Shown here in pieces: positions 9,070 through 26,455 of a DNA stretch of 64,000 bases. Location of the stretch: positions 140,686-204,685 of the IMG/VR virus record IMGVR_UViG_3300018962_000001; one strand, given 5' to 3'. Numbering within the stretch: the first letter of the stretch is position 1; each line of letters opens with the position of its first letter. The notes under the pieces are model-generated. The model saw only the letters and a program-made list of their open reading frames with translations. It was not told the origin of the DNA and ran no database searches. The position numbers and the translations under genes were made by a program.

Positions 9070-12000
9070 TTAAATATATCCAGCGGCACGCAGATCGCGC
9101 AAAAAGCCTGCCCAGGCTTCTTCTTGCCGGGCATCAATCATCCGGGCAATTTGATCAAGGGTATAATTGACGCCCTCAATCTGGTAGGTCGGAGCATAGG
9201 TGATGGGCGGCAGGTTCAGCCGGGTCGCCACGGCAGCCAGCGCGGGCGCTGCTGTTTGTGCCCGGAATCGGTCAAAGGTCGCAGCGCCGCCACCAAGCGA
9301 ACGGTCGAGCAATCCATGCTCCAGCTCCTGTGTCAATGCGACTAATTGATCCTCCATCGCCGCCCGCAATCGCGCGAGTCGTTCGCGTAACCGATCGACG
9401 GGAACGACGACCTCCGGCCCAGCCTCGCCCAATAAGTAATTGGTACCAGTATGCGCCCCGATCCCGGTCACCGGCTCCCGAATGACGCCACCTGTGGCAT
9501 ACCCAACCCAGCCACCACCACGCATCACCGACTGGACCCCAGGCAGATCACGAATATGGCCGTACCGGCGTTTAATATAATTAATCGCGGCGATCAGGTT
9601 TTCAATGGGATCATAGATGTCTCCGGGATTGCCAAGATCCCGTCCGTTCGCATAGCCCAGATCTCCGGTATAGGCACGGGCGGATGCCCGTTTGTTGGCA
9701 TTAAAGGTTTGCGGAATCGTTTGAGCCAGGCCGCGCGATGGATACCCCGCGCGAAAATTCGAGTCCCATAGATTGATAGATCGGGGATTCCAGCCTGACT
9801 CATACTTGCCAAGAATGGACAGCCCCTGAAGCCAATCGCGGGTAACCGCAGCCCCTGCCAGTGCCTCGCTGATCCACGATCGCGCTGGCCCCGGTGTGCC
9901 CGGCCAGTACTCGCCACCCCGTGGGTCCGGCGTGTCTTGAGTCACGCCCCGCAGTTCGCGGAGGAAGGCCGCGAGTTCCAGCTTGGGATCAACCCAATTG
10001 CCCCGTTTGTCACTAATCTGATAGTGGAGGTGATCGACCATTTCCCCGTCGCGGTAGGGCGTATGCCCGACGTTGCCGATGTCATAGCCCCGCTCGATCT
10101 GCTGGCCCGCGCGGAAGTTGGCTGGATCAACGAGGTGGGCATAGTAGTGTTCGCGACCCGATTGCCCGCGAATTTGAATATAGTTTCCACCGAATCCGTT
10201 CCAGCCCTGATAGGAAACGACGCCGCTCTCCAGTGCTCGGATGATCGTCCCTTCATCGGCGAGAATGTCGATGCCCTCGTGTCTCCCGGTGGTATCAGGA
10301 CGCGCATCCCCCCACCACGATACGATCTCCCGGCTGCCGACCATAAACTCGGCAGCGTCATAGACATCGGTCCCGACCTGGGCATCCTCAAAGGCACGCA
10401 GTAAGCCTTCGACCAGCGCGAGTGCCCACTCTTTCACTTTGCCGAAGATCGCCGTGCCCACACCAGCAAAGGCATCACCAGCAAAGTCGAACGACTCGAA
10501 TCCCACGGCGCTCAGCCCACGATCCAGCACCCACCCCGCACCTTGACTGATCCAGTTAATGACATCGCCGATCGCGTCGCCAATGCCAAGTTCATAGGCC
10601 GGGTAGTTCCCCGGTAGCAACCCACGCCGCCGCAGGCGCGCGGTCTCCTGATGCGGGAGGACCGTTGAGCCGCGCGGCAACATAACGATTTCCGGTCCCT
10701 TTTCTCCCACAATGGCCGGGCCACCTGGATGGTACCCCCGCCGCGTGCCCCGCGCATATTGGGGAATGGTCGGAAGATTAAAGGTATCGGGAAGCGGCGC
10801 GGCAGCACCGAGCTTCTCGGCAATCCAATTGATCGCGTCGCGGAATTTGTTGACAAAGAACTCAAACCCTTTAATGGCAGCATTAAGTCCCGACGATCCA
10901 TCCGCCGGGCCGATGGCCGTGTTTGCCATCTTTTTCATAATGGTGCCGATCTCGTTAGCAGCTCCCACGAACGGGGCGAGAATGGCCTCCTTGATCTCGC
11001 TGATTCGGTCGCTCATCCCTTTCCAGGCGCGATAGCCTCCATTGAGCACGCCATTGCCCCGGTCATCCCAGGTGCCGACAAAATCACGCATCGCGGTTTT
11101 GCCACCCTCGACGAGATTCGCAAAGAGTCCCAGCACGCCAGGGCCACCAACGGTGTACGTTCCCACCAAATTGTTCCGAATAAGATTCGGAAGATTAACG
11201 ACCAGTTGTGCCACCTGGCCGATTAAGGAGTCGCCGCTGGTATCACTCAGCCCAATCCACTGCTTCACGGTGCGACTGGTATCGTTGATTAACCCCCAGA
11301 ATAGCCCAAGGACGCCGCCGCCGCCGGACGCATAGCGCCCGACCAACTCGCCGATGAGTCGGAAGAATCCATTCGCGAGGCGTTGGATCGTGCCTAACAT
11401 CGATCCGGCAGCAGAATCCGATCCGACCCAGGCAATCAGCGCATCGAGGCCTTCATTGACAAGCCAATACAGCCAGCCCAGTACCCCGTTCTGCCCGGAC
11501 GCATACGTGCCAACCATCCATCTGATCGCAGCGAGATAGTCATCCGCAAGCGTGCGGATCAGACCGAGCATCCCCCCCTGTTGGTAGGCTCCGATCCATC
11601 GCTCAATATTTGTTAGCGCGGTATCCACCAGCGTTGCCAGGAGTCCAAGCAGACCGCCGCCGCCGGGAGTCCACGTGCCGACCATCCAACGGATGGTCTG
11701 AAGCATGGCATCCGCGAGACCCTGGATTTTCGCAAGCCCCCAGTCCCATAAGTTCTGGAACCACCGCACGATCCCGTTGACCATATCGGGAATAATCGAG
11801 TGCCCAACCAGATCCACCCACAGCTGGTAAAAGGCGTTTTTCACCCCTTCCCACAAGCCAACTGCCAGGCCGATCACCGTGGTCACTGCCCCGGTGAAGA
11901 TCGATACTACACTGTCAATAATCCCCTGGACAAAATCGCCAACCGCTTGCCAAAGCGGCTGCCAATCGCCGGTATAGAATCCGTAGATGATTCCCGCAAC

Positions 12001-15000
12001 AATCCGCACCACCCCGGTGATCACCGTCGCGATTAGTTGAATCACGCCAAGGAAGACCTCAATGATTCCGCCAAGCCCGACGATCACGCCCGGCAGCACC
12101 CCGGACAGCAGATTGATGATGAATCCCAGGACATAGAGAAACGTCGTTCCCAGAATCGTGCCCACCGTCACCAATACCGCAGCGATACCTCCTAAGATGG
12201 GCATGAGCGACCGCAGGGTATTGAAAAAGATGGTGACCAGAGGACTCAGCACCTGGAACGCGGTTTGGAGATTCGCCCAGAGGCGTCCGAACGCTAACCC
12301 AACCGCTCCCACGGCACGTTGAAAATCATGAAAGAGCGGTTGCAGGAAGGCGATGAATCGACTCCAGGTCGGCGTGACCGTGGTGTTCCAGTACTGAACA
12401 AACTCGGCGACGCGCCCCTGAATATTGCCCCAGTTCTTCAGCCACGCCACCGTTAACAGCCCGATCACCAGCGCGATCGCGCCAATCGCGAGGGTGACGG
12501 GGTTGATCGCGACCGCTAAGGCTGAGAAGATGGCTGGCCCGGTGCGGAATAGCCCCAGGAGGTTGCTGACAGGATTGGTCAGCATGGTGAGCGGGTTCAA
12601 TGCCCGCCAGATTGCGCTGAACACCGGTCCCAGCCGTGATCCCACGGCTGCCAGGACCGGGAAGCGCGTGCCGAGGGCCGTAAATAGGCCCGTAACCGTG
12701 TTGACAGGGTGGATTAACAGTTGGAATGGATTCAGGATTCCGCGCAGCGCAGGGGCTAGGGGACCAAGGTAGGTTGTCACCCCTTGGATTCCAAGATGAA
12801 TCGCACCGCCAACGCGGAAGACGGCAAAGGCCGTCCCAATCCCCGCGACGACACTGAGAATCGTCCCGCCATTGGTTTGCAAGAAGGCAAAGAAGGGCTG
12901 GATTTCGGCCCGCACCCCTTGCATCGTCGCCCGCAGATTGGCAAACTCATCGGGGAGTTGACCGAGTCCGCCGAACTCGGATTCCCAATCCACCCGTGCT
13001 TCGCCCCCCGCAGGCATCGGAGGCAGCGGGATGTCGGGAGCCGTCATGCCAAAGAGGGCAGTGACAAATTGGACAACCGCATTGCGGGCTAAGTCGATTC
13101 GCTCCTTAGCCGTATCAATCGTGGTGCTGAATGATTGCCATGCTTGTTGGCCTTGGGCCAGGCCAGTCGTGATATTGTCGGTGAGCTGCGTGATCGCCTG
13201 GGTCGCGTCACCAAAGGTCGATTGTTGTCCACGAGCCGCTTGATCGGCTGCTTTTTGCGCCTTTTCCTGAATGTTCAGGATCATCTGCTCAATTTCTGAG
13301 TACTCTTGTGATCCCTCGGCATAGCGACTGCGAAGGCCCATCAACAGCTCAAGGGCTTCGTTATATCGTCCTTGATCCGTCAGGAGGCGCGCTTGGGCCT
13401 TGATCTGCCGCTCATAGGCGTTTTCTGCCTTGATCCCCGAACTTGCGATCGAACGATCCCGCTGGGCTTGCAGACGCTCAATCTGCGCCTCGATGTTGAG
13501 CCACTCTTTCGATCCCTCGGCAAAGTGCGACTGTCGCTCCCGCAGCTTCGCAATCGCTCCATCATAATCGCCGGTTGCCTTTTCCAGATTGGCTTGCGCG
13601 GCGATCTGTTGATCCATCGCCTTCGCAGCCTTGCCGGTTGCCTCCTCCTGCAACCGTGCCCGGCGTTCTTCGAGCACCTGGATCTGGCGCAGCGTGTCAA
13701 AGTACTCCTTGCTCCCCGGCTCCAAGCCCGCCAACTTTTCGCGCAAGATGGCGATCTGCCCGTTGGTGTCCTCCAGTTCCAGGTTGTATTTTTCCTGGGC
13801 GGTTCCCACCTTGGCAGCATCGCGGGCGGCGTCCTCCGCTTGCTGGCGTTGGAGATTGGCGATCTGCTCCATGATGCGGTAGCGCTCTGCCGGATCAGTG
13901 GTTCGTTCAAGCTCCTCGTTAAGCAACGCGATTTTGCCGGGCGTATCCGCAATGGCGAGCTGGTAGTCGAGGAGGGCTTTTCGCTGCCGTTCCTGTTCTT
14001 CCGTCGCTTCACGCCGGGCTTGATTGAGTTCTCGCTCCGCTTCCAGATATTCCAGTGTGCCGGGGGTCAATTCACTTAAGCGTTGCTCTAGGATCGCGGT
14101 CTTTTCCGCCGCCGTCGCCGTTTCGAGGGCATTGCGGCGCTGCGCCTCGGCCAAGGCTTCCGCTTCTTTGCGCGACTTTTCTTCAGCCGCCGCCTGAAGC
14201 TGCGCCAACTGGGTCCGCAGCCGGTATCCTTCTTCAGACTCTTCGCCAACCGCCGCGATCCGGTCGCGCAACATTTGCTGGCGTGTTGCATCATCGGCAA
14301 TCGCGTATTGATAATCCCACTGTGCGTCCGCTAAGCGCTTGAGCCGATCTTCTTCCTTTTTGGTCCCACTTTCGCGTTCATCGGCCAGGCGATGCTCCAG
14401 GTCATAGATCTGCGCGAGAATCTTGTAGTATTCTTCACTTCCATGCTCAACATTCGCAAGTTCACCGCGCAGGATCGCCAGTTTCCCGGCAGTATCGGCA
14501 ATATGGAAGTTGTAGTCGCGCTGGGCTTTCGCGCGGCGGTTGGCTTCCAAGACCGCCTCGCGTTCCCCCGGCGTCATGCCCGGCAGCAGCCCAAGTTTGC
14601 GATCTTCATTGATCTGGCGTTGAATTTGCAGCACCTGCTCCATGAAGCGGAGTTCCCGCTCTTGGAGGCGGTCGGCGGCGGCAAATCCGGCCAAACGGTC
14701 GGCGACCACCTGCTGCTGCTGTTTCAAAATCTCAAGCTGCTGCTGGAGTTGGGTCTTTTGATCGTCTTGGGCCTGTTCCTGGGCCTCCAACATCGCCAGC
14801 TGATCGCGCGCGGCACGTTGTTGCGTAAAGGTGCGTGCGTTGCGCAGGGCACGTTCTGCCGAGCGTGTTGCTTCTTGGAGACGGCGGCGGGCGGCGGGAT
14901 CATCCAAGGCCCGCAGCTTCGCTTGCACCTCATCGATCTGTTGGGTAAGAACGGCCTGATTCAACCGCTCTTGAATACGTAGGAAGATGTCGCGGTTTTG

Positions 15001-16713
15001 TTCGCCGAGGCGCGACTCGATCTGCATCAATGATTCGGCACTGATCCTCCCCGTTTGATTGATGGAGTCGATCGCCTGCGCGACCAGTTGCGTGATCCCC
15101 GGATCTCCATTGGTGCCCACGGAGATGCGAATCGCTTCCTCAGCACTAATTTTGCCCGCCGTAACCAGCGCCGTCAGCCGATCTTGAACCTCCTCGGCGA
15201 TCGTCGTCAGTGCGCCAAAGTCCGAATCGTCCCACTCAAGATAGGCCCGGAGGACCGGACTAAACCACGTGTCAATGGTCGAGAGCGGCCCTTCTCGCGG
15301 CGGCGAGAAACCACGCAAGAACGCTTCGATCCGGCTAGTGATTGCCAGGATTGCCATCTCGACGTAGCTACTGGCTCCTGCTAACATGCCATCGGCGAAG
15401 GCTGCAATGCTGTTCACACCGCCAAGGAACAGTTCACGCGACAGGTTCTGAATCAGGCGAAGAATGAGTCCACTTAATCCCAGCAGGAGATTCGTAATCT
15501 GGGTGGCAGCCGTGCCGAAATCGCCGCTAAACAGGGAGATCAAGGCTCCCCGGAGCGGCGCGAGCGCGGCCAGCACCTGCGCTGCAAACTGGCCGTATCC
15601 TCCCACGACCCGATCCACAAAGGCCAGCGCTGGGGCGGTTGCCTGGCTGAATCCGGTTGCCATTGCCTGAACCGTGCTGATAGCGAGGCGCATGCCTGCG
15701 GCAATGCCCTGCCCCAGCGTGGCGGCGGCGGCGAATAACGCCGGGTCTTTCAGTAAATTTTCGAGGCCAACCAACTGCTCTTTGATGACATCAAAGATTG
15801 GTGCTCCGAACACGCTGCGCAGCATGAACCAGCGGTCAGAAATATTCGACAGAATACCGTCCATCGATCGGGCGGCAAGTTGGGCGGCACCGCCGAACTT
15901 CTCGGCAAGAATCTCGTTGAGGGCGGTGAGCGCCTGATCCGCCGTGCCGAGATACGTTCCCTGCGCATCGAACTTGAGTCCCTTCATCTCAAGATCGGAG
16001 CGAGTCGCAATCGCAAGCTCTCGGAGGCGGCGGAAGGCATCGCCGAAGTCACCCGTTCCAACACGAGCAATCGCGAAGGTGACTTGTTCCAATTGGCTGC
16101 TTAAATCACGGATCGCCGGACGAGTGACGACCGCTGCGTTGGCGACGTTGAGGAGAAATTCTTGCGTGCGCGCGCCAGCAACCTGGAGTTGCCGATCCGC
16201 TTCCACCAGCGCGGGCAGATCAAACGGGGTTTGCACATTAATCGCCTGCAATTCGGCAAGGCGACTTCGGGCGCGCGCGAGCATCTGCGCTGTCGTATCG
16301 CCTTCCTGTCGCAGCAGGGTCATGTAGGAGATGATGCTGTTTTCGAGTTGCTGGTTGGGACCAACCAGCCCGGAGAGTGCTGCCGAGGCAATCCGGCCTA
16401 ACTCACGGAATCCAAAGGTCAACGCGCCCACGCGCGTGATCAGGCCGACCATCCCCCCGCCTAAGACGTTGATCGACGATGACAATCCTGACGAGGTTTG
16501 CTGGGCACGGACGAACGTGTCGCGAAGCACGGAAGCCAGGGTTCGGGCTGACGCGGTAAGTGAACTCATGGATCGCGTGCTCGTCTGCGTGTTGACGTTA
16601 AACCCCTGGAGCTGTGATCCAAGCGCTTGAAGATTTGACCCGATGGCGCGGAGGGCGTTCAGCGCCGACTGGGCATTGCCCGTAAAATTTAAGAGAACCT
16701 GAATTTGATTCAC
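9070..16713 (-). CDS. Tail tape measure protein (2547 aa) with C-terminal M23 peptidase and SLT lytic-transglycosylase domains
   Basis: Start re-assigned to GTG 16713 (AAGGAGG RBS). N-terminal tape-measure domain, long helical repeats, HEGID...YAHL...HLHY (M23), ESGWNP..INLWDSN..G.PS.GL.Q (SLT). Confidence 0.9.
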   Translation of the reverse strand: MNQIQVLLNFTGNAQSALNALRAIGSNLQALGSQLQGFNVNTQTSTRSMSSLTASARTLASVLRDTFVRAQQTSSGLSSSINVLGGGMVGLITRVGALTFGFRELGRIASAALSGLVGPNQQLENSIISYMTLLRQEGDTTAQMLARARSRLAELQAINVQTPFDLPALVEADRQLQVAGARTQEFLLNVANAAVVTRPAIRDLSSQLEQVTFAIARVGTGDFGDAFRRLRELAIATRSDLEMKGLKFDAQGTYLGTADQALTALNEILAEKFGGAAQLAARSMDGILSNISDRWFMLRSVFGAPIFDVIKEQLVGLENLLKDPALFAAAATLGQGIAAGMRLAISTVQAMATGFSQATAPALAFVDRVVGGYGQFAAQVLAALAPLRGALISLFSGDFGTAATQITNLLLGLSGLILRLIQNLSRELFLGGVNSIAAFADGMLAGASSYVEMAILAITSRIEAFLRGFSPPREGPLSTIDTWFSPVLRAYLEWDDSDFGALTTIAEEVQDRLTALVTAGKISAEEAIRISVGTNGDPGITQLVAQAIDSINQTGRISAESLMQIESRLGEQNRDIFLRIQERLNQAVLTQQIDEVQAKLRALDDPAARRRLQEATRSAERALRNARTFTQQRAARDQLAMLEAQEQAQDDQKTQLQQQLEILKQQQQVVADRLAGFAAADRLQERELRFMEQVLQIQRQINEDRKLGLLPGMTPGEREAVLEANRRAKAQRDYNFHIADTAGKLAILRGELANVEHGSEEYYKILAQIYDLEHRLADERESGTKKEEDRLKRLADAQWDYQYAIADDATRQQMLRDRIAAVGEESEEGYRLRTQLAQLQAAAEEKSRKEAEALAEAQRRNALETATAAEKTAILEQRLSELTPGTLEYLEAERELNQARREATEEQERQRKALLDYQLAIADTPGKIALLNEELERTTDPAERYRIMEQIANLQRQQAEDAARDAAKVGTAQEKYNLELEDTNGQIAILREKLAGLEPGSKEYFDTLRQIQVLEERRARLQEEATGKAAKAMDQQIAAQANLEKATGDYDGAIAKLRERQSHFAEGSKEWLNIEAQIERLQAQRDRSIASSGIKAENAYERQIKAQARLLTDQGRYNEALELLMGLRSRYAEGSQEYSEIEQMILNIQEKAQKAADQAARGQQSTFGDATQAITQLTDNITTGLAQGQQAWQSFSTTIDTAKERIDLARNAVVQFVTALFGMTAPDIPLPPMPAGGEARVDWESEFGGLGQLPDEFANLRATMQGVRAEIQPFFAFLQTNGGTILSVVAGIGTAFAVFRVGGAIHLGIQGVTTYLGPLAPALRGILNPFQLLIHPVNTVTGLFTALGTRFPVLAAVGSRLGPVFSAIWRALNPLTMLTNPVSNLLGLFRTGPAIFSALAVAINPVTLAIGAIALVIGLLTVAWLKNWGNIQGRVAEFVQYWNTTVTPTWSRFIAFLQPLFHDFQRAVGAVGLAFGRLWANLQTAFQVLSPLVTIFFNTLRSLMPILGGIAAVLVTVGTILGTTFLYVLGFIINLLSGVLPGVIVGLGGIIEVFLGVIQLIATVITGVVRIVAGIIYGFYTGDWQPLWQAVGDFVQGIIDSVVSIFTGAVTTVIGLAVGLWEGVKNAFYQLWVDLVGHSIIPDMVNGIVRWFQNLWDWGLAKIQGLADAMLQTIRWMVGTWTPGGGGLLGLLATLVDTALTNIERWIGAYQQGGMLGLIRTLADDYLAAIRWMVGTYASGQNGVLGWLYWLVNEGLDALIAWVGSDSAAGSMLGTIQRLANGFFRLIGELVGRYASGGGGVLGLFWGLINDTSRTVKQWIGLSDTSGDSLIGQVAQLVVNLPNLIRNNLVGTYTVGGPGVLGLFANLVEGGKTAMRDFVGTWDDRGNGVLNGGYRAWKGMSDRISEIKEAILAPFVGAANEIGTIMKKMANTAIGPADGSSGLNAAIKGFEFFVNKFRDAINWIAEKLGAAAPLPDTFNLPTIPQYARGTRRGYHPGGPAIVGEKGPEIVMLPRGSTVLPHQETARLRRRGLLPGNYPAYELGIGDAIGDVINWISQGAGWVLDRGLSAVGFESFDFAGDAFAGVGTAIFGKVKEWALALVEGLLRAFEDAQVGTDVYDAAEFMVGSREIVSWWGDARPDTTGRHEGIDILADEGTIIRALESGVVSYQGWNGFGGNYIQIRGQSGREHYYAHLVDPANFRAGQQIERGYDIGNVGHTPYRDGEMVDHLHYQISDKRGNWVDPKLELAAFLRELRGVTQDTPDPRGGEYWPGTPGPARSWISEALAGAAVTRDWLQGLSILGKYESGWNPRSINLWDSNFRAGYPSRGLAQTIPQTFNANKRASARAYTGDLGYANGRDLGNPGDIYDPIENLIAAINYIKRRYGHIRDLPGVQSVMRGGGWVGYATGGVIREPVTGIGAHTGTNYLLGEAGPEVVVPVDRLRERLARLRAAMEDQLVALTQELEHGLLDRSLGGGAATFDRFRAQTAAPALAAVATRLNLPPITYAPTYQIEGVNYTLDQIARMIDARQEEAWAGFLRDLRAAGYI

Positions 16714-16725
16714 GGTTGTCCCTCC

Positions 16726-16754
16726 TTGCCGAAGGGACGAACGTGATCTACAGT
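16726..16754 (+). promoter_or_regulatory. Putative SigA promoter for the isolated pentamer tract
   Basis: TTGCCG-N17-TACAGT; lies immediately next to the tape measure RBS on the opposite strand. Confidence 0.5.
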
Positions 16755-16765
16755 GCGGTGAACGC

Positions 16766-16845
16766 GGCCTGGATCGGCCTGAGACGGCATCGACGGGCAA
16801 GGCACGGTTGGGCTATCCGTGGCTAGGTATGGTTGGGCGTGGCGC
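16766..16845 (+). ncRNA. Isolated GGY-NN pentamer tract (16 phased units); candidate stand-alone guide RNA
   Basis: GGCCT GGATC GGCCT GAGAC GGCAT CGACG GGCAA GGCAC GGTTG GGCTA TCCGT GGCTA GGTAT GGTTG GGCGT GGCGC, between a promoter-like element and a terminator. Confidence 0.7.
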
Positions 16846-16880
16846 AGCACCTCACATGTGTGAGGTGCTGTTTGATTCTT
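16845..16880 (+). terminator. Intrinsic terminator
   Basis: 11 bp perfect stem CAGCACCTCAC-ATGT-GTGAGGTGCTG followed by TTTGATTCTT. Confidence 0.8.
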
Positions 16881-17029
16881 GGGATGCCAACGGTGCCCCA
16901 TCCGAGCCTCGCACGATACGGATCATGTGTCGGATGGGCGAGCACGGGGGAATGGTGGCCCATATAGGAGAAGTCGGGGCAGATGCGCGGACTTCTGCCC
17001 CGTAGTATAGCAAAGACCAGCGGCGTCGT

Positions 17030-17221
17030 CTAGGATGGGTCGGTGGGGGACTCCCACGGGAAGGGAATCCCATTGGCGAGAAAATACTTCCGCCAAAACT
17101 CGGTGTCGAAGGGATGGCGATCCGGCGGCGGCGGCGTGAGATGGCGCGTCTTAATGGCTGCCGCGATTGCCACCAGCGAACGGTAGATCACGGCCCAGAA
17201 CAAGCGATCGGCGTTCTTCAT
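17030..17221 (-). CDS. Hypothetical protein, 63 aa (MKNADRLFWAV...)
   Basis: AAAGGAGG RBS before ATG 17221. Confidence 0.65.
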   Translation of the reverse strand: MKNADRLFWAVIYRSLVAIAAAIKTRHLTPPPPDRHPFDTEFWRKYFLANGIPFPWESPTDPS

Positions 17222-17231
17222 TGTTCCTCCT

Positions 17232-18239
17232 TTAAGGAGCAGTGCGCTCCGCTGCTTCGATGGTGTGAATCCCGGTGAGAAGTTGATAATACGCCAAGCT
17301 TCCAGGCTGAAATAAGAGCAGATAGCCTTGGAGCAACTCTTTCCGCGTGGCACGCGCGGGTTCTAAGGTGATGCGTGCTCGAATCAGCGCCATCCGTTCG
17401 TCATCCGTCAACTGCGGATCGGCCAGCCGATCTTCAAGCAGCAGGATCTTCTGGACGCGCGCAGCGGCAGCGAGGGCCATTGTGGTCGGCGAGATGATCG
17501 AGTCGGAGTCGTCCTCCGGTGGCGTATAAGGCCGGGGGGCAGCTAATCGGGTGGTTGGCCCCGTCGCCGGACGCAGACGTTGATAAATCTCGACCCACGA
17601 CAGGCCCAACCGCCGGAGTGCGAGGATTTCCGCACGCCGGTTCGGCAGATTCTGATAGGCCACCGACTGACGCAGATCCTCCCAGAGCGGCTGAATCTCG
17701 CTGAACCACTGCTGACGGCGGAGAACATCCTGTGGCCCCGGATCAAGCACTCGCACCTCCTCCGGCCAGAAAGCAATCGCCTGATCGATCTGGAGATTAA
17801 TGAGTCCCAGTGGCACGCCCGCAGCATCGCACTCAACACCATCTTGATCGATCCACGGCTTGTGCGGTGATCGCCGGATGAGATGGGGTTTCGTTCCCTG
17901 GATGACCGGGAAGATCGCCGGATCGAGTGGGGGGACAAAGGCCGCATGCGACGTGGGATCATCCACGCGGGCCAGATCTGGGATCGTGTGCCCACACCCG
18001 GAACAAAACTTCGCACCGGGTTCGATTCCACGATACCCACAGCGGGTACACTGATTTGCTGCGCGCGCGCGCTGTAGGCACTGATTTGCGAGCAATGTCC
18101 GGGACCGAAACTCTGCCAGATCAGATCGATAGAGCAGGGTGGTCCGGTAGGCTGCATACAAGGTCGCCATCAGGACTCCTACCTGAACTCCCTCACTCGA
18201 AAGATGGAATAGGAGATCCACGAACCAATCATTCATCAC
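17232..18239 (-). CDS. 335 aa protein with N-terminal hydrophobic segment, double zinc ribbon and a possible HTH
   Basis: CTRC...CSGC; RRAEILALRRLGLSWVEIYQRL; overlaps the HTH gene stop. Confidence 0.7.
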   Translation of the reverse strand: MMNDWFVDLLFHLSSEGVQVGVLMATLYAAYRTTLLYRSDLAEFRSRTLLANQCLQRARAANQCTRCGYRGIEPGAKFCSGCGHTIPDLARVDDPTSHAAFVPPLDPAIFPVIQGTKPHLIRRSPHKPWIDQDGVECDAAGVPLGLINLQIDQAIAFWPEEVRVLDPGPQDVLRRQQWFSEIQPLWEDLRQSVAYQNLPNRRAEILALRRLGLSWVEIYQRLRPATGPTTRLAAPRPYTPPEDDSDSIISPTTMALAAAARVQKILLLEDRLADPQLTDDERMALIRARITLEPARATRKELLQGYLLLFQPGSLAYYQLLTGIHTIEAAERTAP

Positions 18240-18451
18240 TCCTCCCGTTCCTCCGGCGGCGGCGGCGCGAACAATGCCAGCAACGGCACACCGAGCGCGG
18301 CAGCCATTTTGTCAAGCGATCCGATCGTTAACGTCTCGACGTGGCGATTATGCCAGGCTTTGCGAACCGTCCCCACCCCCAGATCGGCCCGTCGTGCCAG
18401 CTTCGAGATATTTAACGCCTGGGCGGTGGCGATAACAGCTACTTGAAACAT
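18236..18451 (-). CDS. Cro/C1-type (XRE) HTH regulator, 71 aa
   Basis: ISKLARRADLGVGTVRKAW...LDKMAAALGV pattern; AAGGAGG RBS; divergent from the RAMP locus. Confidence 0.85.
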   Translation of the reverse strand: MFQVAVIATAQALNISKLARRADLGVGTVRKAWHNRHVETLTIGSLDKMAAALGVPLLALFAPPPPEEREE

Positions 18452-18491
18452 TCGATCCTCCTTCCTCGTGTGGAGCGCGCATCATTGTGCA

Positions 18492-18580
18492 TTGACAGAC
18501 CGCATATCTATGTTATACTGTCATTATAATGTATAGTATATAGAGTATAGCATACAAAACCTATGCTACATTATACTCCC
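18492..18580 (+). promoter_or_regulatory. SigA promoter and inverted-repeat operator region upstream of the pentamer array
   Basis: TTGACA-N16-TATACT with extended TG; AT-rich island with TATAATGTA/TACATTATA and TAGCATA/TATGCTA inverted repeats. Confidence 0.7.
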
Positions 18581-18624
18581 ACTCCCGGCAGAATGCTAGA
18601 CATTCGACAGATGAATTCGGACAT

Positions 18625-19025
18625 GGTTGGGTGTGGATTGGCTAGGCTAGGAGAGGCACGGTGAGGTCTGGCACGGATGACTCTGCACTGAGTCCAATCC
18701 CTTCGGGGTATCTGGGTATGGCATGGGAACGGTTGGGTCCGGTAAGGATCGGCTGGGAGCGGCAAGGTGTGGCAAGGTCGGGCTGGGCCGGGCAACGCAG
18801 GGCACGGATGGCGGTGTATTCCGCCACCATTCCCCACCAGGGGAATACGAGGATGGCTGGGCGCGGGCATGGCGAGGCGTGGCAAGTCGAGGCTGGGCCG
18901 CGCTAGGTGCGGCAAGGCACGGATGATCGTGGATTCGATCACCATCCCTCACACGAGGGTTATTTGGCTCGGATCGGTCAGGATTGGCTAGGTCAGGTGG
19001 GGCTGGGTGAGGCTTGGTTTGGTAC
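18625..19025 (+). ncRNA. Upstream array of four GGY-NN pentamer tracts separated by double hairpins (candidate guide-RNA array)
   Basis: Tracts at 18625-18679, 18715-18810, 18855-18925 and 18966-19025; the first three end GGCAC-GGATG plus a stem-loop. Confidence 0.85.
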
Positions 19026-19038
19026 AAGGAGCAGTATG

Positions 19039-19674
19039 ATGGCATCCAACATGATTCAAGCGACGGTTGAGATCCAGGGAACGAAGCCACTGTTGTGGCA
19101 CGCCTTTACGCCCGACAGCATTCCGGCGGACGGCAAGAAGGAAAAGACCGGGGTGGCGGGTAACGATCCCCAGGAATGGCGGCGATCCTTCCTGGCGGAT
19201 CACGAAGGCCGCTTGTTTGTGAACCCGGAATACATCTTCGGCTGCCTGCGCGATGGCGCGCGACACACCAAAAAAGGCCGTGGATCGATTATGTCGAATG
19301 TGGCGGCAACGCTTCAGATCGTGGACGAGCGGATCTACACCGATCGCTATTTCCCACGCAACGGCGCGACTGGCCCCTTTGATCCGGCATCGGCGGATCG
19401 CCCGCCGATCGAGATCACCGAGCCGGTTTATCTCGACGTGCGATCGGTGAAGAACCCGTCCACGAAAGGTCGGAACGTCCGCTACCGGGTGGCGGCGAGT
19501 CCAGGGTGGCGGGCGAGCTTTACGATTCTGTGGGACAAAACCATTGTCAGCCGCACCGAGATGGAGGCGGTCATTACTGATGCGGGCCGACTCGTCGGGC
19601 TGGGTGATGGCCGATCGATCGGCTTTGGTCGATTCATGGTGGTGCCAGGGTCCATCACGTTTACCGAGGTCTAG
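19039..19674 (+). CDS. Stand-alone RAMP/Cas7-like protein (211 aa), Vipr-like candidate
   Basis: N-terminal beta-strand VEIQGTKPLLWH and C-terminal glycine loop GRLVGLGDGRSIGFGRF characteristic of RAMPs; AAGGAG RBS at 19026 (alternative ATG 19036). Confidence 0.8.
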   Translation: MASNMIQATVEIQGTKPLLWHAFTPDSIPADGKKEKTGVAGNDPQEWRRSFLADHEGRLFVNPEYIFGCLRDGARHTKKGRGSIMSNVAATLQIVDERIYTDRYFPRNGATGPFDPASADRPPIEITEPVYLDVRSVKNPSTKGRNVRYRVAASPGWRASFTILWDKTIVSRTEMEAVITDAGRLVGLGDGRSIGFGRFMVVPGSITFTEV

Positions 19675-19684
19675 AGTCTTTCGA

Positions 19685-19743
19685 GGCGAGGCATGGTGAG
19701 GTGAGGTATGGGGTGGTTGGCGAGGTACGGCCTGGCAAGGAGT
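19685..19743 (+). ncRNA. GGY-NN pentamer tract between the RAMP and HNH genes
   Basis: GGCGA GGCAT GGTGA GGTGA GGTAT GGGGT GGTT GGCGA GGTAC GGCCT GGCAA GGAG; the end doubles as an RBS. Confidence 0.75.
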
Positions 19744-19749
19744 TTGAAC

Positions 19750-20067
19750 ATGGGCATGAAACGACAACCTCCGAAGATCTGGGAAGGAACCCGCAAACGA
19801 ATATTCGAACGCGATCGGGGGATCTGCCAATCTCCCCTGGCTCCACCCCTGTGTCAAGGGAAACGCGGCGAGTTAACGCTTGCCACGGCGCATATCGACC
19901 ACCGGCGAAGCGGTCGGTTTGGCACGAATGCGGATAGCAACCTCCGGGTGCTCTGCCGCGCGTGCCACGTCCTCCGCGACGATCCGCGCCACCGAGGCAT
20001 GATCGGCGGAGCCTTGCGCGACGGGATCATCCCTCCCCATTGGCGGGAGCTAACCTGGGGAGAGTAG
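19750..20067 (+). CDS. HNH endonuclease, 105 aa
   Basis: IFERDRGICQ..C...HIDH...G.N..SNLRVLCRACH; AAGGAG RBS 7 nt upstream. Confidence 0.85.
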   Translation: MGMKRQPPKIWEGTRKRIFERDRGICQSPLAPPLCQGKRGELTLATAHIDHRRSGRFGTNADSNLRVLCRACHVLRDDPRHRGMIGGALRDGIIPPHWRELTWGE

Positions 20068-20289
20068 ATGGGTCGTCCAAGGCACAGAACGGGTGCCGTG
20101 CGCCAGCTGCCGTGGCGCAGAGTCGTCACGGCAGCACGTGATGGCGGAATCATGGGGGCGGTGCTGGGAGGGGTGTTCTTTGGCCCTTCTGGCGCGCTGG
20201 TGACCAGCTTAGTAGGAGCGGTGGCAGCGGCGGCGGTTCGCTGGTATCGAAGCGTCAAGGCGAGAGGTCGCATGGGAAGGCATGGATGA
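20068..20289 (+). CDS. Small putative membrane protein, 73 aa
   Basis: Abuts the HNH stop; Gly-rich hydrophobic segment GAVLGGVFFGPSGALVTSLVGAVAAAAV. Confidence 0.55.
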   Translation: MGRPRHRTGAVRQLPWRRVVTAARDGGIMGAVLGGVFFGPSGALVTSLVGAVAAAAVRWYRSVKARGRMGRHG

Positions 20290-20640
20290 TCGTGGATCGA
20301 TCCCACTTCTCGGTTGGGCAAGCGAGGGTCTGGCAAGGACAGGCAAGGCTTGGCTCGGCAGGGTCGGGTTCGGCTGGGCAAGGATACTGGTGTTTCCAGT
20401 ACCATCGATTGGGTGTGGCGGGGCGGTGGTAGGGTGGGGCTTGGCTTGGTCCGGCACGGCAGGGATGATGGTGTCTCCATTCCACCTCATGGTCGGGCGA
20501 GGAGGGGCGAGGCAGGGCTAGGCGGGGCAAGGTGAGGCCCGGCAAGGTTCGGCACCGATCCTCGTGTCATCGAGGCCACCACGGGGTATGCCGAGGCGTG
20601 GTAAGGTGAGGCTAGGCTGCGGTGAGGTCCGGCGAGACGG
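20259..20640 (+). ncRNA. Downstream array of GGY-NN tracts (one degenerate plus four)
   Basis: Tracts at 20259-20288, 20312-20386, 20412-20467, 20491-20560 and 20585-20640, with TG-loop hairpins after the first four. Confidence 0.85.
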
Positions 20641-20642
20641 GG

Positions 20643-20673
20643 AACAGGACGGGTGCTGGTCACCCGTCCTGTT
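20643..20673. terminator. Hairpin at the convergence of the pentamer array and the tail chaperone genes
   Basis: AACAGGACGGGTG-CTGGT-CACCCGTCCTGTT perfect 13 bp stem. Confidence 0.75.
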
Positions 20674-21145
20674 GATTCTCCGGTGCCTGGTCGGCGAACT
20701 CATCAACCTTGTTGGCACGTTTGTAGGCTTGCCAGAAGGCTGACTGCATCGGCGGCGGCGGCGGCGGGGCGAATGGATCTTGATAGACCTTCTCAAACGG
20801 CGGCAGCGCCTGCGGTTTCTTGCCACCGAACGCGGGTCCAAGGACGCGGGCCAGGGCGGTTTCGAGGGCCATAATCTGACTCATTTGCTGGTCCCAGCGA
20901 TTCCGCGCGACCTGCTGGTACTCGCGATGGAGTCGCCGCCACCGCCAGCCCAGCACCTCCTCCAGGGGCAAATGCCGGGTTGCCACGATCTCGGTCACCA
21001 TGTCGTCGATCAGGGTGCCAATGGCTCCTATGATGTCGAAGGCGAGTTGACCACCGTTGCGCCAGCTGGTGGTGGAGTCTTGGCCGGTTGTTGATTGCGC
21101 TTGCCCCACAGCTCCACCGCTTGCCGGGCGAGCGTGAAGTTTCCC
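20660..21145 (-). CDS. Tail assembly chaperone, frameshifted C-terminal part (gpT-like)
   Basis: The -1 frame is open from the slippery site G GGA AAC (21145-21139) to the stop at 20660. Confidence 0.75.
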   Translation of the reverse strand, partial: GKLHARPASGGAVGQAQSTTGQDSTTSWRNGGQLAFDIIGAIGTLIDDMVTEIVATRHLPLEEVLGWRWRRLHREYQQVARNRWDQQMSQIMALETALARVLGPAFGGKKPQALPPFEKVYQDPFAPPPPPPMQSAFWQAYKRANKVDEFADQAPENQQDG

Positions 21146-21693
21146 AGTGCCGCTGCCAAGTCTTCGGACTGCCGGATGCGCCAGGCCAGTGCCTTCACAA
21201 TCGGCGCGACCTTTACATCGTCCTCCGACAGCTGCCGGAAAAACAACTCCGCCTCTTTCTTCTGGTGATCCTTGCCACCGAACAACACGATCGCGGCAAT
21301 CCGCAAAAAGTGTTGCACATTGATGGTTGCAAGCAAGGCGAAGATCGTGGCTTCAAATGGCTGCGCCGACTGGACCTTGCCGTTCACCAGCGCTGTAAAC
21401 GCACTGCCCAGCTGCCCGGCGAGGTATTTTTCAGCCCGCAACGACACGTCCCCAATCACATTACACAGTGCCAAGATCGCGTGAATATCGGGTTCTCCGA
21501 TCTCAAAGACTCGTCCGCCAAAGGTGACTCGATAGTCCACCACTTCCTCGACCACCGCCTCCGTAGGCCCGTCCTCGGCAGCTGGTGGAAACAAGGGTTC
21601 ATCGGGCGCAGCGATCGGTTCCGATCCCCAGAGCGATTGGTCGTTGGGCAAGGGAGCCTGGCCCCCCAGGTCGAAGCTATTGCCGTCTGCCAT
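21028..21693 (-). CDS. Tail assembly chaperone (gpG-like), 221 aa
   Basis: Follows the tail tube gene; contains an in-phase slippery heptamer. Confidence 0.8.
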   Translation of the reverse strand: MADGNSFDLGGQAPLPNDQSLWGSEPIAAPDEPLFPPAAEDGPTEAVVEEVVDYRVTFGGRVFEIGEPDIHAILALCNVIGDVSLRAEKYLAGQLGSAFTALVNGKVQSAQPFEATIFALLATINVQHFLRIAAIVLFGGKDHQKKEAELFFRQLSEDDVKVAPIVKALAWRIRQSEDLAAALGNFTLARQAVELWGKRNQQPAKTPPPAGATVVNSPSTS

Positions 21694-25393: not shown

Positions 25394-26455
25394 CTAGATC
25401 GTTGGAGCCGTATAGGTTGCGCCCCCAACATAGAGGACGGCCCCGTTCGTCCTATTCCAGACCCCGATCCCAAACTCCCTGTCCATCGTCTGGGCGCGCA
25501 GTGGATAGTGCTCGTGGTCGGCAGCAATCGTCAGATCCCCGGCGAGACCACCATCACGGGTGCGCAGCACCAGCGGTTTCAGCGGCGAGGCGGCATCGAA
25601 GCAGAAAAGGTAGCCGGATGGAACCCACGGCTTCACCCACACCTCCGCTGGCCCGAAGATCCCGATGGCGCGGTTATACATCGTGCCCATATCGAGAGTC
25701 CGACCCGGTGCGGTTCGCTCGTTGGCTCCCGGCTGAATCCGCATATCGAAATAGGGCGTGAAGTTCGAGAATGCCCGGAACGTGGCTTCCGACGCGCGAT
25801 TGATATACAGCCGGACCCCTACGCCAAACCCGTGCTCGACCACCGTCTCAACCACGTTCAGCGCTGCCGCTTCGGTCAGCGTGGTGGTTGCGAGGTAGTG
25901 GGTATGTGTGCTTGAATCAAACGGCTGCCCGTAGGGATCGTTGGGGATGGCCGTCCCATCCGCATTGACCAACGCCCGCAGCGGCACGTTGACGTTATCC
26001 ACCAACCGATCGATGTAGGCAAGGTTGTTCGTTGGGGTAAATAACGCACGCTTAATCTGCCGTTGGATATTCCGAATATCCGCCGTGCGGGCCGCGACAT
26101 ATTGTGCGTCCAGCTCGGCGACGGTTCGGTTCATCATGTAGAGTCGCGTCCATTGAATCGAGTACTGGAACAGGCGCATCGGAAAGCCCACGGTAACACC
26201 GGCGGCGATCTTCTGCGCGTCTGCCGTGCCGTACTCGTCAACTTCGACCATCTCGCCCTCGGCCACGCCACCGTAGCGGCGCTGGCGATCGACGGTCGGA
26301 TCGACCAGATCCCCGATCATTTCGCGCACAATCATATTGTGGGCATCGAGGTTGGCTTGAATCGCGGCGAACGCACGGTCCTCCCCAAACTGCGCAATCG
26401 TCTGATTGGCGGCCTGGGTGTCAAGGACCTGTAAGGTACCGTATGAGGTTGCCAT
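25394..26455 (-). CDS. Major capsid protein, 353 aa
   Basis: Size; position after scaffold and decoration genes; EVDEYG, FPMRLFQYSIQWT, REFGIGVWNR motifs consistent with an HK97-fold MCP. Confidence 0.85.
   Translation of the reverse strand: MATSYGTLQVLDTQAANQTIAQFGEDRAFAAIQANLDAHNMIVREMIGDLVDPTVDRQRRYGGVAEGEMVEVDEYGTADAQKIAAGVTVGFPMRLFQYSIQWTRLYMMNRTVAELDAQYVAARTADIRNIQRQIKRALFTPTNNLAYIDRLVDNVNVPLRALVNADGTAIPNDPYGQPFDSSTHTHYLATTTLTEAAALNVVETVVEHGFGVGVRLYINRASEATFRAFSNFTPYFDMRIQPGANERTAPGRTLDMGTMYNRAIGIFGPAEVWVKPWVPSGYLFCFDAASPLKPLVLRTRDGGLAGDLTIAADHEHYPLRAQTMDREFGIGVWNRTNGAVLYVGGATYTAPTI

What the first reader, a model, noticed from the sequence alone, without database searches (positions are those of the whole stretch)
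16726..16880. Self-contained promoter-pentamer tract-terminator unit: a stand-alone guide RNA gene 2 kb from the RAMP gene
Seen: TTGCCG-N17-TACAGT, then 16 phased pentamers (13 start GG), then an 11 bp hairpin with T tail. This predicts a ~115 nt RNA divergent from the tape measure gene, with its -35 next to that gene's RBS. Variable dinucleotides: CT TC CT AC AT CG AA AC TG TA GT TA AT TG GT GC. Inference: an independently expressed guide that loads the RAMP protein in trans; its transcription could also interfere with tape measure expression.
Basis: partly seen in the sequence, partly recalled or inferred. Interest (0 to 1): 0.8.

Follow-up and report, generated by a model that had tools for sequence, protein, structure and literature searches.

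The report
Stand-alone VIPR guide RNA gene
This is a small stand-alone gene for a VIPR guide RNA (five-base GGYNN repeats capped by a terminator hairpin) serving a phage-borne, CRISPR-like DNA-targeting system 2 kb away; it is real, but the kind was described in 2026 preprints.

Summary
On the + strand, 16766-16845 carries 16 in-phase pentamers (13 GG, 13 with a pyrimidine third). A perfect 12-bp hairpin and a T-rich tail follow. A weak sigma-70-like promoter (8/12) sits just upstream. In-phase GG runs this strong occur only between 16751 and 20506.

Two kb away lies a full VIPR locus (Viral Interference Programmable Repeat, bioRxiv 2026): a strong promoter, four repeat tracts, a 212-aa Vipr protein, a further tract, an HNH nuclease gene, a 73-aa ORF, four more tracts and a terminator. 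The Vipr protein matches the solved SUSP1 Vipr (E 8e-6) and its model has a Csm3/Cas7 fold.

The finding is therefore a detached ("solo") vrRNA gene. Its NN dinucleotides should read duplex DNA with a one-base skip after Vipr protomers coat the GGY motifs.

Not shown here: transcription, loading onto Vipr, or any effect on the tape measure gene. No RNA run was listed. No target of this guide was found. A sibling guide (B1) matches an ImmA-like prophage regulator gene at 24/26 positions with the skip on the codon wobble.

Verdict: a new member of a known kind, of moderate interest.

The parts
16726..16754 (+). Putative promoter of the solo vrRNA: TTGCCG, 17-nt spacer, TACAGT. The predicted transcription start is near 16761.
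   Evidence: Read directly from the sequence. It scores 8/12 to the consensus and falls below the scan threshold. Sites this good occur 25 times in 128 kb. Inferred, not shown.
16766..16845 (+). Guide tract of the solo vrRNA: 16 GGYNN units, 13 with GG and 13 with Y at position 3. NN = CT TC CT AC AT CG AA AC TG TA GT TA AT TG GT GC.
   Evidence: Position entropies are 0.67/0.67/1.50/1.95/1.94 bits; simulated windows reach at most 9 of 16 in-phase GG.
16844..16880 (+). 3' cap and intrinsic terminator: 12-bp hairpin followed by TTTGATTCTT. It overlaps the last NN of the tract.
   Evidence: The last three units and the flank CTGTT(T)GATTCT resemble those of the array-terminal unit B4.
9070..16713 (-). 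Tail length tape measure gene (2547 aa). GTG start at 16713; SD GGAGGG at 16720-16725 lies inside a hairpin at 16718-16738.
   Evidence: phrog_167 E 3.4e-73; sequence; fold.
17004..17032 (-). Promoter-like site (TAGACG, 17-nt spacer, TATACT, with an upstream TG). It would start the tape measure transcript and read antisense through the solo vrRNA.
   Evidence: Consensus match only.
18236..18451 (-). Cro/C1-type HTH gene, divergent from the VIPR promoter. A candidate regulator of the locus.
   Evidence: Pfam HTH_26 E 1.6e-5.
18492..18519 (+). Strong promoter of the main VIPR locus: TTGACA, 16-nt spacer, TATACT (11/12), in an AT-rich stretch.
18625..19025 (+). Upstream vrRNA array with four tracts: A1 18625-18679, A2 18726-18810, A3 18866-18925 and A4 18966-19025. 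Hairpin tails beginning GGCAC GGATG separate them.
19036..19674 (+). vipr gene encoding a 212-aa RAMP protein with G-loop GLGDGRSIGFGRF.
   Evidence: PDB 36pp_D SUSP1 Vipr E 8.4e-6; phrog_4652 E 3.7e-14; AF2 model with pLDDT 84.5; Csm3/Cas7 fold hits at E about 4e-7; 2031 homologues.
19685..19743 (+). Tract M between vipr and HNH: 7 + 5 units with one 4-nt slip. Its 3' end GGCAAGGAG doubles as the SD of the HNH gene.
   Evidence: Relatives have a tract at the same position.
19750..20067 (+). HNH endonuclease gene, the likely vap accessory gene.
   Evidence: Pfam HNH E 2.9e-4; PHROG HNH families; 54% identical to the HNH next to vipr in L008; vipr-HNH pairs in L011, L090, L091, L092 and L148.
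20068..20289 (+). 73-aa ORF of unknown function. Its 3' end runs into a tail-like GGCATGGATGA.
20312..20680 (+). Downstream vrRNA array with four tracts: B1 20312-20386, B2 20428-20467, B3 20491-20555 and B4 20585-20640. It ends in a terminator hairpin at 20643-20673 followed by TTGATTCT.

Best explanation
The unit at 16726-16880 is a detached (solo) vrRNA gene of the phage's own VIPR system.

Proposed mechanism. A weak sigma-70-type promoter starts an RNA of about 120 nt near 16761. This RNA is almost entirely 16 GGYNN units and ends in an intrinsic-terminator hairpin that also serves as the structured 3' cap. Vipr protein made from 19036-19674 polymerises along the RNA, one protomer per unit. 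It buries each GGY and displays each NN. The filament then reads duplex DNA of a competing mobile element with a one-base skip (xNN, the skip usually on the codon wobble). It represses that DNA or, with the linked HNH nuclease, perhaps cuts it.

Shown here: the tract, the hairpin, the Vipr homology and fold, the conserved vipr-HNH pairing, and the recurrence of detached terminator-capped vrRNAs in a relative.

Taken from the literature: filament assembly and the 1-nt-skip code.

Inferred: transcription from this promoter, loading in trans, and the identity of the target.
For: 1. Tract signature. The tract has 13 of 16 GG in phase, against a maximum of 9 in simulations. Position entropies (0.67, 0.67, 1.50, 1.95, 1.94 bits) mirror those of the 111 array units (0.13, 0.28, 1.51, 1.94, 1.94).

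2. Clustering. All strong GG-phased runs in 64 kb lie on one strand between 16751 and 20506.

3. Vipr protein. It matches SUSP1 Vipr at E 8.4e-6, with D177, R179 and R138 conserved as D191, R193 and R151. The AF2 model (pLDDT 84.5) hits Csm3/Cas7 at E about 4e-7.

4. Published definition and mechanism. vrRNAs, Vipr filaments and solo vrRNAs working in trans are described.

5. 3' cap. A hairpin abutting the last unit is the 3' end of array-terminal vrRNAs here (B4) and in relatives L008 and L090.

6. Precedent. L008 has a second vrRNA on the other strand, 2.6 kb from vipr, with its own promoter and terminator.

7. No self-target in the window above a shuffled-guide null, as published for VIPR.

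8. A sibling guide follows the code. B1 matches an ImmA/IrrE-HTH gene in viral contig L147 at 24/26 variable positions, with the skip on the wobble base.
Against: - The promoter is only 8/12 and falls below the scan threshold.
- No RNA run was listed, so there is no transcript evidence.
- Three of 16 units lack GG, against about 6% of array units. However, A3 has a similar share, and the preprint notes frequent internal degeneracy.
- The unit lacks the internal tail (GGAUG stem-loop) and the 3' GGCAA GGATG motif seen in most other units.
- No target was found. The exact 26-base pattern gave 0 hits in the viral and metagenome collections, and half-patterns gave only chance-level extensions of at most 22/26.
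- No close relative of this phage was available to test conservation of the unit.
Confidence: 0.75

Rival explanations
1. Relic vrRNA. The unit is a decaying leftover of an older array edge. It is no longer expressed or loaded, and has no current function.
For: The unit has three degenerate units, a weak promoter (8/12) and no conserved internal tail or GGCAA GGATG end. A second, far more eroded GG-phased stretch followed by a hairpin lies next to it at 16932-17001. The motif GGCAAGGCACGG, which normally ends a tract, sits in the middle of the tract at units 7-8. No target was found.
Against: The phase is kept over 80 nt without any indel. The hairpin arms are perfectly complementary, 12 of 12. 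A promoter-like site sits at the right distance. Y at position 3 is still 13/16 and the NN entropy is maximal. The degeneracy is comparable to array unit A3.
Confidence: 0.15
2. The function lies on the other strand or in the overlap. The element acts as a cis-antisense regulator of the tape measure gene, whether or not it also guides Vipr. In one version the + strand RNA pairs with the 285-nt tape measure leader. In the other, convergent transcription tunes tape measure expression.
For: The unit lies wholly between a minus-strand promoter-like site (17032-17004) and the tape measure start at 16713. The minus-strand leader folds unusually well (z = -4.05) and sequesters the SD in an 8-bp hairpin. 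The terminator is one-directional, so minus-strand transcription can pass through it.
Against: Nothing requires it. The same antisense relation holds for the whole 2.2-kb VIPR locus, which lies in the opposite orientation to the tail genes. Relatives place VIPR loci near tail genes in either orientation. The pentamer signature is explained fully by Vipr binding.
Confidence: 0.07
3. Competitor-directed or decoy solo vrRNA. The RNA is made to be loaded by the Vipr of a rival phage, or to redirect Vipr complexes to repeated host sites, as satellite solo vrRNAs do, rather than to arm the phage's own system.
For: Published solo vrRNAs work in this way. The unit has its own promoter and a 3' end unlike the internal tails.
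Against: The phage encodes its own Vipr 2 kb away. The 3' end resembles that of its own array-terminal unit B4. The guide has no match above the null in the VIPR loci of 12 relatives. The host genome could not be searched.
Confidence: 0.03

Closest known systems
VIPR systems (type II, phage SUSP1 and the P. fulva prophage; bioRxiv 10.64898/2026.04.26.720920 and 10.64898/2026.04.26.720927)
   Same: Both have a small Vipr RAMP protein. Both have vrRNAs built of 9-16 GGY/NN pentamers with a structured 3' end, arranged as arrays on both sides of vipr. Both are phage-encoded and show no self-target.
   Different: The Vipr here is only distantly related: phmmer E 8e-6, with W178 of the G-loop replaced by G192. 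The accessory gene is an HNH nuclease rather than a DNA-binding vap1. Tails are simple hairpins or intrinsic terminators, not the SUSP1 pseudoknot. The locus has ten tracts, against four vrRNAs in SUSP1.
Solo (orphan) vrRNAs of F5 satellites and SUSP1-family phages (bioRxiv 10.64898/2026.10.15.759431)
   Same: In both cases a vrRNA is encoded apart from vipr, with its own expression signals, and acts in trans on a Vipr protein.
   Different: The published solos were recognised by a 40-bp tail shared with the helper's vrRNAs, and most sit in elements that lack vipr. This one is in a VIPR-positive phage, 2 kb from the locus. Its cap is a terminator hairpin shared only with the array's last unit. 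Its target is unknown.
Nuclease-associated VIPR types (III and V in the preprint)
   Same: vipr is paired with a predicted nuclease. The preprint's Fig. S21 legend lists an HNH domain among the vap proteins of types II, III and VII. One relative (L092) lies in a defence island beside Qat and MmeI genes.
   Different: The type could not be assigned, because the preprint's tree and type tables are not held as text. The preprint describes the nuclease types as enriched in cellular defence islands. This locus and several relatives sit inside phage tail modules instead.
Class 1 CRISPR-Cas backbone (Cas7/Csm3 on crRNA)
   Same: Both share the RAMP fold, G-loop and thumb, with one protomer per fixed RNA step. 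In both, arrays of variable guides are separated by conserved structured elements.
   Different: The period is 5 nt, with only 2 informative bases per unit, instead of 6 nt with 5. There are no CRISPR repeats, no cas1/cas2 and no other cas genes in the window. By the published code the target is read with a 1-nt skip.

Membership tests
VIPR system | A Vipr protein: a small RAMP with an RRM core, a glycine-rich loop and a thumb, related to known Viprs | tested here: met
   window:19036-19674 matches SUSP1 Vipr (36pp_D) at E 8.4e-6, with an aligned G-loop and D/R/R contact residues conserved. The AF2 model (pLDDT 84.5) hits Csm3/Cas7 chains at E about 4e-7. The protein also matches phrog_4652.
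VIPR vrRNA | At least 4 (typically 9-16) tandem YNNGG/GGYNN units with conserved GGY and hypervariable NN | tested here: met
   The tract has 16 units, 13 with GG and 13 with Y at position 3. Entropy is 0.67/0.67/1.50 bits at GGY and 1.95/1.94 bits at NN. Simulations reach at most 9 of 16.
VIPR vrRNA | A conserved structured 3' tail after the repeat tract | tested here: inconclusive
   A 12-bp hairpin abuts the last unit. The same layout ends B4 here and terminal vrRNAs in L008 and L090. The sequence is not the internal tail shared by seven other units, and homology to B4 rests on about 25 nt of flanks.
VIPR vrRNA | Expressed as a discrete RNA of about 100 nt that co-purifies with Vipr | not testable with these tools
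   No RNA run was listed for this sequence. The DNA runs only re-found the same contig.
VIPR vrRNA | A natural DNA target matching the NN string under the 1-nt-skip rule (80% or more) | tested here: inconclusive
   For the solo guide, the exact 26-base pattern gave 0 hits, and sub-patterns gave only chance-level extensions. The collection scans allow no mismatches, so sensitivity is low. The sibling guide B1 has a 24/26 match in wobble phase.
VIPR vrRNA | No self-targeting of the source element | tested here: met
   The best self-match in the 64-kb window is 17/26, equal to the shuffled-guide null (mean 16.3, maximum 18). The other 140 kb or so of the phage contig could not be read.
VIPR system | Minimal locus: vipr plus a vap accessory gene, flanked by non-coding vrRNA regions, with no CRISPR array or cas genes | tested here: met
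   The locus is vipr plus HNH plus a 73-aa ORF, flanked by 4 and 4 tracts. The vipr-HNH pair recurs in six relatives. Neighbouring genes gave no Cas family hits apart from a weak Cas6-like match of Vipr itself.
CRISPR-Cas (class 1) | A CRISPR repeat-spacer array and an adaptation module (cas1/cas2), with a crRNA of 6-nt protomer period | tested here: not met
   The period is 5 nt. Direct reading of 18200-21200 shows no repeat-spacer organisation; the only repeat search run was for inverted repeats. Pfam, NCBIfam and PADLOC gave no cas1/cas2 hit for the genes tested around the locus.
Hammerhead-interspersed vrRNA arrays / any Rfam family | A match to a curated RNA covariance model | tested here: not met
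   No family reached the gathering score in 64 kb. A permissive scan of 16600-20800 gave only two chance-level hits.

The most novel reading that the evidence does not exclude
The placement may not be accidental. The solo vrRNA gene sits antisense inside the tape measure leader, so early + strand transcription and late minus-strand transcription would exclude each other. This guide, whose terminator hairpin replaces the usual tail as the nucleation cap for Vipr, would then be made only before tail-gene expression, giving VIPR guides a temporal programme. The RNA, or Vipr bound to it, might in turn hold back tape measure synthesis.
Probability: 0.08. Interest if true: 0.55.

Novelty: new member of a known kind. 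Interest (0 to 1): 0.35.

Why it matters
VIPR was described only in 2026, and experiments so far cover E. coli and Pseudomonas type II systems.

This locus adds a well-preserved example from an uncultured phage contig of about 205 kb from a biocrust. It pairs vipr with an HNH nuclease and carries ten guide tracts. Its tails are hairpins or terminators rather than pseudoknots or ribozymes. One guide is detached from the locus.

It shows that detached, self-terminating vrRNA genes also occur in VIPR-positive phages far from the Enterobacteriaceae. It also offers a compact test case (16.6-20.7 kb) for two questions: whether a plain terminator hairpin is enough as the vrRNA cap, and whether HNH-linked VIPRs cut their targets.

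It does not change the picture of how such systems work.

Tried and rejected
**Ideas considered before the PDB hit and dropped once VIPR explained the 5-nt period**
- A TRAP- or CsrA-like protein-binding RNA.
- A two-tetrad G-quadruplex tract.
- A pentapeptide-type coding repeat. The + strand tracts contain stop codons, and the minus-strand 63-aa ORF 16710-16901 is a by-product of CC phasing.

**Searches that found nothing**
- Rfam at gathering thresholds over the window, and permissively over 16600-20800. No hammerhead or other ribozyme lies between the tracts.
- tRNA/tmRNA scan.
- blastn of 16000-19000 against GenBank phages.
- No Pfam or NCBIfam family matched Vipr.
- No RNA run was listed. 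The DNA runs only re-found identical contigs, so there is no strain variation to exploit.

**Target searches for the solo guide**
- No self-target in the window.
- No match above the null in 12 related VIPR loci.
- The exact 26-base pattern gave 0 hits in viral and metagenome contigs.
- 16- and 18-base sub-patterns gave 60, 16 and 52 hits, all in AT-rich unrelated contigs and extending to at most 22/26.
- These sub-patterns may have wrongly included unit 15, if the last units act as a handle rather than as guide.

**Other negative results**
- Guide A2's single hit (L146) extends only at chance level, 21/32.
- The solo unit is not a recent copy of any array unit.
- The 335-aa neighbour is not homologous to the 321-aa gene beside the detached vrRNA of L008.
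- The VIPR type (I-VII) could not be assigned, because the preprint's tree and tables are not held as text.

Full report
**1. The observation**

TTGCCG is at 16726-16731, followed by a 17-nt spacer and TACAGT at 16749-16754. Sixteen pentamers in one phase then run from 16766 to 16845, followed by a hairpin and a T-rich tail.

Thirteen units start with GG; the exceptions are GAGAC, CGACG and TCCGT. Thirteen have a pyrimidine at position 3.

The hairpin has perfect 12-nt arms at 16845-16856 and 16859-16870. The terminator scan calls it as 12 pairs followed by TTGATTCTTG. It is the only structure kept in the centroid fold of the predicted RNA, at -22.5 kcal/mol.

The phasing is not chance. The tract scores 13 of 16 in-phase GG, whereas 200 Markov-simulated windows never exceeded 9. 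The pattern GGNNN x6 occurs 67 times against 2.06 expected.

The promoter is the weak point. It matches 8 of 12 positions, below the scan's threshold, and 25 sites of equal quality occur in 128 kb. Only its position, about 12 nt ahead of the tract, speaks for it.

**2. The surroundings**

Nearly all GG-phased runs in the window lie on the + strand between 16751 and 20506. Reading 18200-21200 shows a + strand unit set among minus-strand tail genes. In order it contains:
- a near-consensus promoter, TTGACA-16-TATACT, at 18492-18519;
- four tracts, A1-A4, separated by small hairpin modules;
- a 212-aa ORF at 19036-19674;
- a further tract, M;
- an HNH gene at 19750-20067 (Pfam HNH; PHROG HNH families);
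- a 73-aa ORF;
- four more tracts, B1-B4;
- a terminator hairpin at 20643-20673.

Over the 111 array units, positions 1-2 are G (0.13 and 0.28 bits), position 3 is C or T in 85%, and positions 4-5 are near-random at 1.94 bits each. The solo tract has the same profile.

The large minus-strand ORF that starts at GTG 16713 is a tape measure protein (phrog_167, E 3.4e-73). A major head protein gene lies at 25394-26455. The window is the end of IMG/VR contig UViG_3300018962_000001 (204,685 bp), from a biocrust metagenome.

**3. Identification**

The 212-aa protein has no Pfam or NCBIfam family. It does match phrog_4652 (E 3.7e-14), weakly a Cas6 model, and the solved "SUSP1 Vipr protein" 36pp_D (E 8.4e-6).

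In the alignment to SUSP1 Vipr the G-loops correspond (GLGDGRSIGFGRF against GVGDWRP-RFGRF). The published RNA-contact residues D177, R179 and R138 appear here as D191, R193 and R151. These are invariant or nearly so among 25 homologues. W178 is replaced by G192.

An AlphaFold model (pLDDT 84.5) hits Csm3/Cas7 subunits of type III-A, type VII and gRAMP complexes at E about 4e-7.

The literature then explains the RNA. VIPR systems pair Vipr with vrRNAs of 9-16 GGY/NN pentamers plus a structured 3' tail. One Vipr protomer binds per repeat and buries GGY. The NN dinucleotides pair with DNA, skipping every third target base, on either strand and without a PAM. Targets are mostly competing phages and satellites, with the skip on the codon wobble. 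Solo vrRNAs, encoded apart from vipr and active in trans, are also published.

The finding is therefore a detached vrRNA gene of a VIPR locus.

**4. How the solo unit compares with its siblings and with relatives**

Seven internal modules share a tail: GGCA(C/A) GGAUG, then a 4-bp stem, a loop starting UG, and the complementary arm. The stems differ but always pair (ACUC/GAGU, GCGG/CCGC, AUCG/CGAU, CUGG/CCAG, AUGG/CCAU, CUCG/CGAG), which is covariation.

The solo unit lacks this tail. It ends like B4, the last unit of the downstream array. Its final three units are similar (GGTTG GGCGT GGCGC against GGTCC GGCGA GACGG). A hairpin of unrelated sequence follows, and then CTGTT(T)GATTCT.

In relatives with Vipr 60-66% identical, terminal vrRNAs likewise run straight into an intrinsic terminator. 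This is seen in L008 at 10908-10987 and in L090 at 10994-11093.

L008 also carries a second vrRNA of 13 units on the opposite strand, 2.6 kb from vipr. It has its own TTGACA-17-TATAAT promoter, a small upstream ORF (58 aa; an RHH-like fold by my reading of the sequence, not searched) and a terminator, and it lies beside a tape measure gene.

Of 12 loci examined, two (the window and L008) have such a detached unit. The vipr-HNH pair is conserved: L008 at 54% identity, and L011, L090, L091, L092 and L148.

The solo unit is not a recent duplicate of any array member. Its three degenerate units (81% GG) compare with about 94% across the arrays, but with 10 of 12 in A3. The preprint notes frequent internal degeneracy.

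**5. Targets**

I used the published scoring: identity over NN positions, 1-nt skip, both strands, with a shuffled-guide null.

No guide has a self-match in the window above the null; the solo guide scores 17/26 against a null mean of 16.3. None matches the VIPR loci of 12 relatives.

Collection scans accept only exact patterns. For the solo guide:
- the 26 informative bases gave no hit in viral or metagenome contigs;
- sub-patterns of 16-18 bases gave 60, 16 and 52 hits, all in AT-rich contigs, with chance-level extension of at most 22/26.

Its target is unknown.

As a check on the system, nine units of guide B1 gave a single hit, in viral contig L147. That hit extends to 24 of the 26 variable positions. 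It lies in a 414-aa ORF combining an HTH with a HEXXH motif (read by eye as ImmA/IrrE-like; no family search was run), at the peptide RHDRLDNFWFCLLH. Every skipped base falls on the codon's third position. This is the published signature of a real target: a prophage switch regulator, read in wobble phase.

The mismatching last unit, GGCAA, belongs to the conserved 3' motif. This suggests that terminal units are handle rather than guide. If so, my sub-patterns for the solo guide that included unit 15 may have been too strict.

**6. Mechanism and its limits**

- Most likely (0.75): a self-contained gene makes an RNA of about 120 nt that Vipr coats in trans, adding a tenth guide to the phage's repertoire. 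Repression, or HNH-assisted cutting, of a competitor's DNA is inferred from the family.
- Relic vrRNA (0.15): this is the main rival.
- Antisense role (0.07): the unit lies antisense between a minus-strand promoter-like site (17032-17004) and the tape measure start. That leader folds strongly (z = -4.05) and hides its SD in an 8-bp hairpin. An antisense effect on tape measure expression therefore cannot be excluded, but nothing supports it directly.
- Transcription could not be tested: no RNA run was listed, and the DNA runs only re-found the same sequence.

**7. Novelty**

The kind is known from three bioRxiv preprints dated April to October 2026. This locus is an undescribed member, with:
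- an HNH accessory gene inside a phage tail module;
- hairpin and terminator tails;
- ten tracts;
- one detached unit in a VIPR-positive phage.

The finding is confirmed but not new in kind.

Noticed in passing
window 16718-16738 (minus strand): The SD (GGAGGG) of the tape measure gene sits in an 8-bp hairpin, GUCCCUUC-ggcaa-GGAGGGAC. The 201-nt leader folds with z = -4.05.
   Followed up: partly
window 16932-17001: A weak GG-phased stretch (6 of 10 units) is followed by the hairpin GGGGCAGA...TCTGCCCC, just downstream of the solo unit. It may be an eroded second vrRNA. It abuts the minus-strand promoter-like site at 17004-17032.
   Followed up: no
window 19016-19038 and 19734-19752; also L002 and L013: The 3' ends of tracts A4 and M run into, or form, the Shine-Dalgarno of vipr (GGTAC AAGGAG) and of HNH (GGCAAGGAG). 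Relatives show the same arrangement. Vipr binding could therefore autoregulate translation.
   Followed up: no
window 18675-18725, 18806-18865, 18921-18965, 20284-20311, 20382-20415, 20463-20490, 20556-20584: The internal vrRNA tails share GGAUG plus a 4-bp stem whose sequence differs in six ways but always pairs, with a loop starting UG. This is a hairpin tail class, not the SUSP1 pseudoknot and not a hammerhead.
   Followed up: partly
L147:12325-12366 (IMGVR_UViG_3300048837_001928): [quoted passage not shown] This is a likely natural target class.
   Followed up: partly
window; L008, L011, L090, L091; contig of P0119: VIPR loci of this Vipr clade repeatedly sit next to tape measure or tail genes, often in the opposite orientation. 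This looks like a favoured insertion spot.
   Followed up: no
L150:10001-19743: A Vipr gene with a 20-unit vrRNA lies beside a 5.4-kb stretch without called genes, followed by Cas1, a reverse transcriptase (RVT_1) and Cas6. VIPR and a CRISPR locus are neighbours here.
   Followed up: no
L092:350-11016: A vipr-HNH pair lies in a cellular defence island beside QatB/QueC-like/TatD genes and an MmeI-type restriction enzyme. The close homologues in the window, L011, L090 and L091 are instead inside phage structural modules.
   Followed up: no
window 18480-18580: An AT-rich stretch (GC 0.48) with several TATAGT/TATACT-like repeats lies between the divergent HTH gene (18236-18451) and the VIPR promoter. 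It may hold operator sites for that regulator.
   Followed up: no
L008:7343-7650 (minus strand): The detached vrRNA of L008 follows a 58-aa ORF (RHH-like by my reading, not searched). The promoter of that ORF is flanked by TTGTCAAT/ATTGACA palindromes. It looks like a regulator-plus-guide mini-operon.
   Followed up: no
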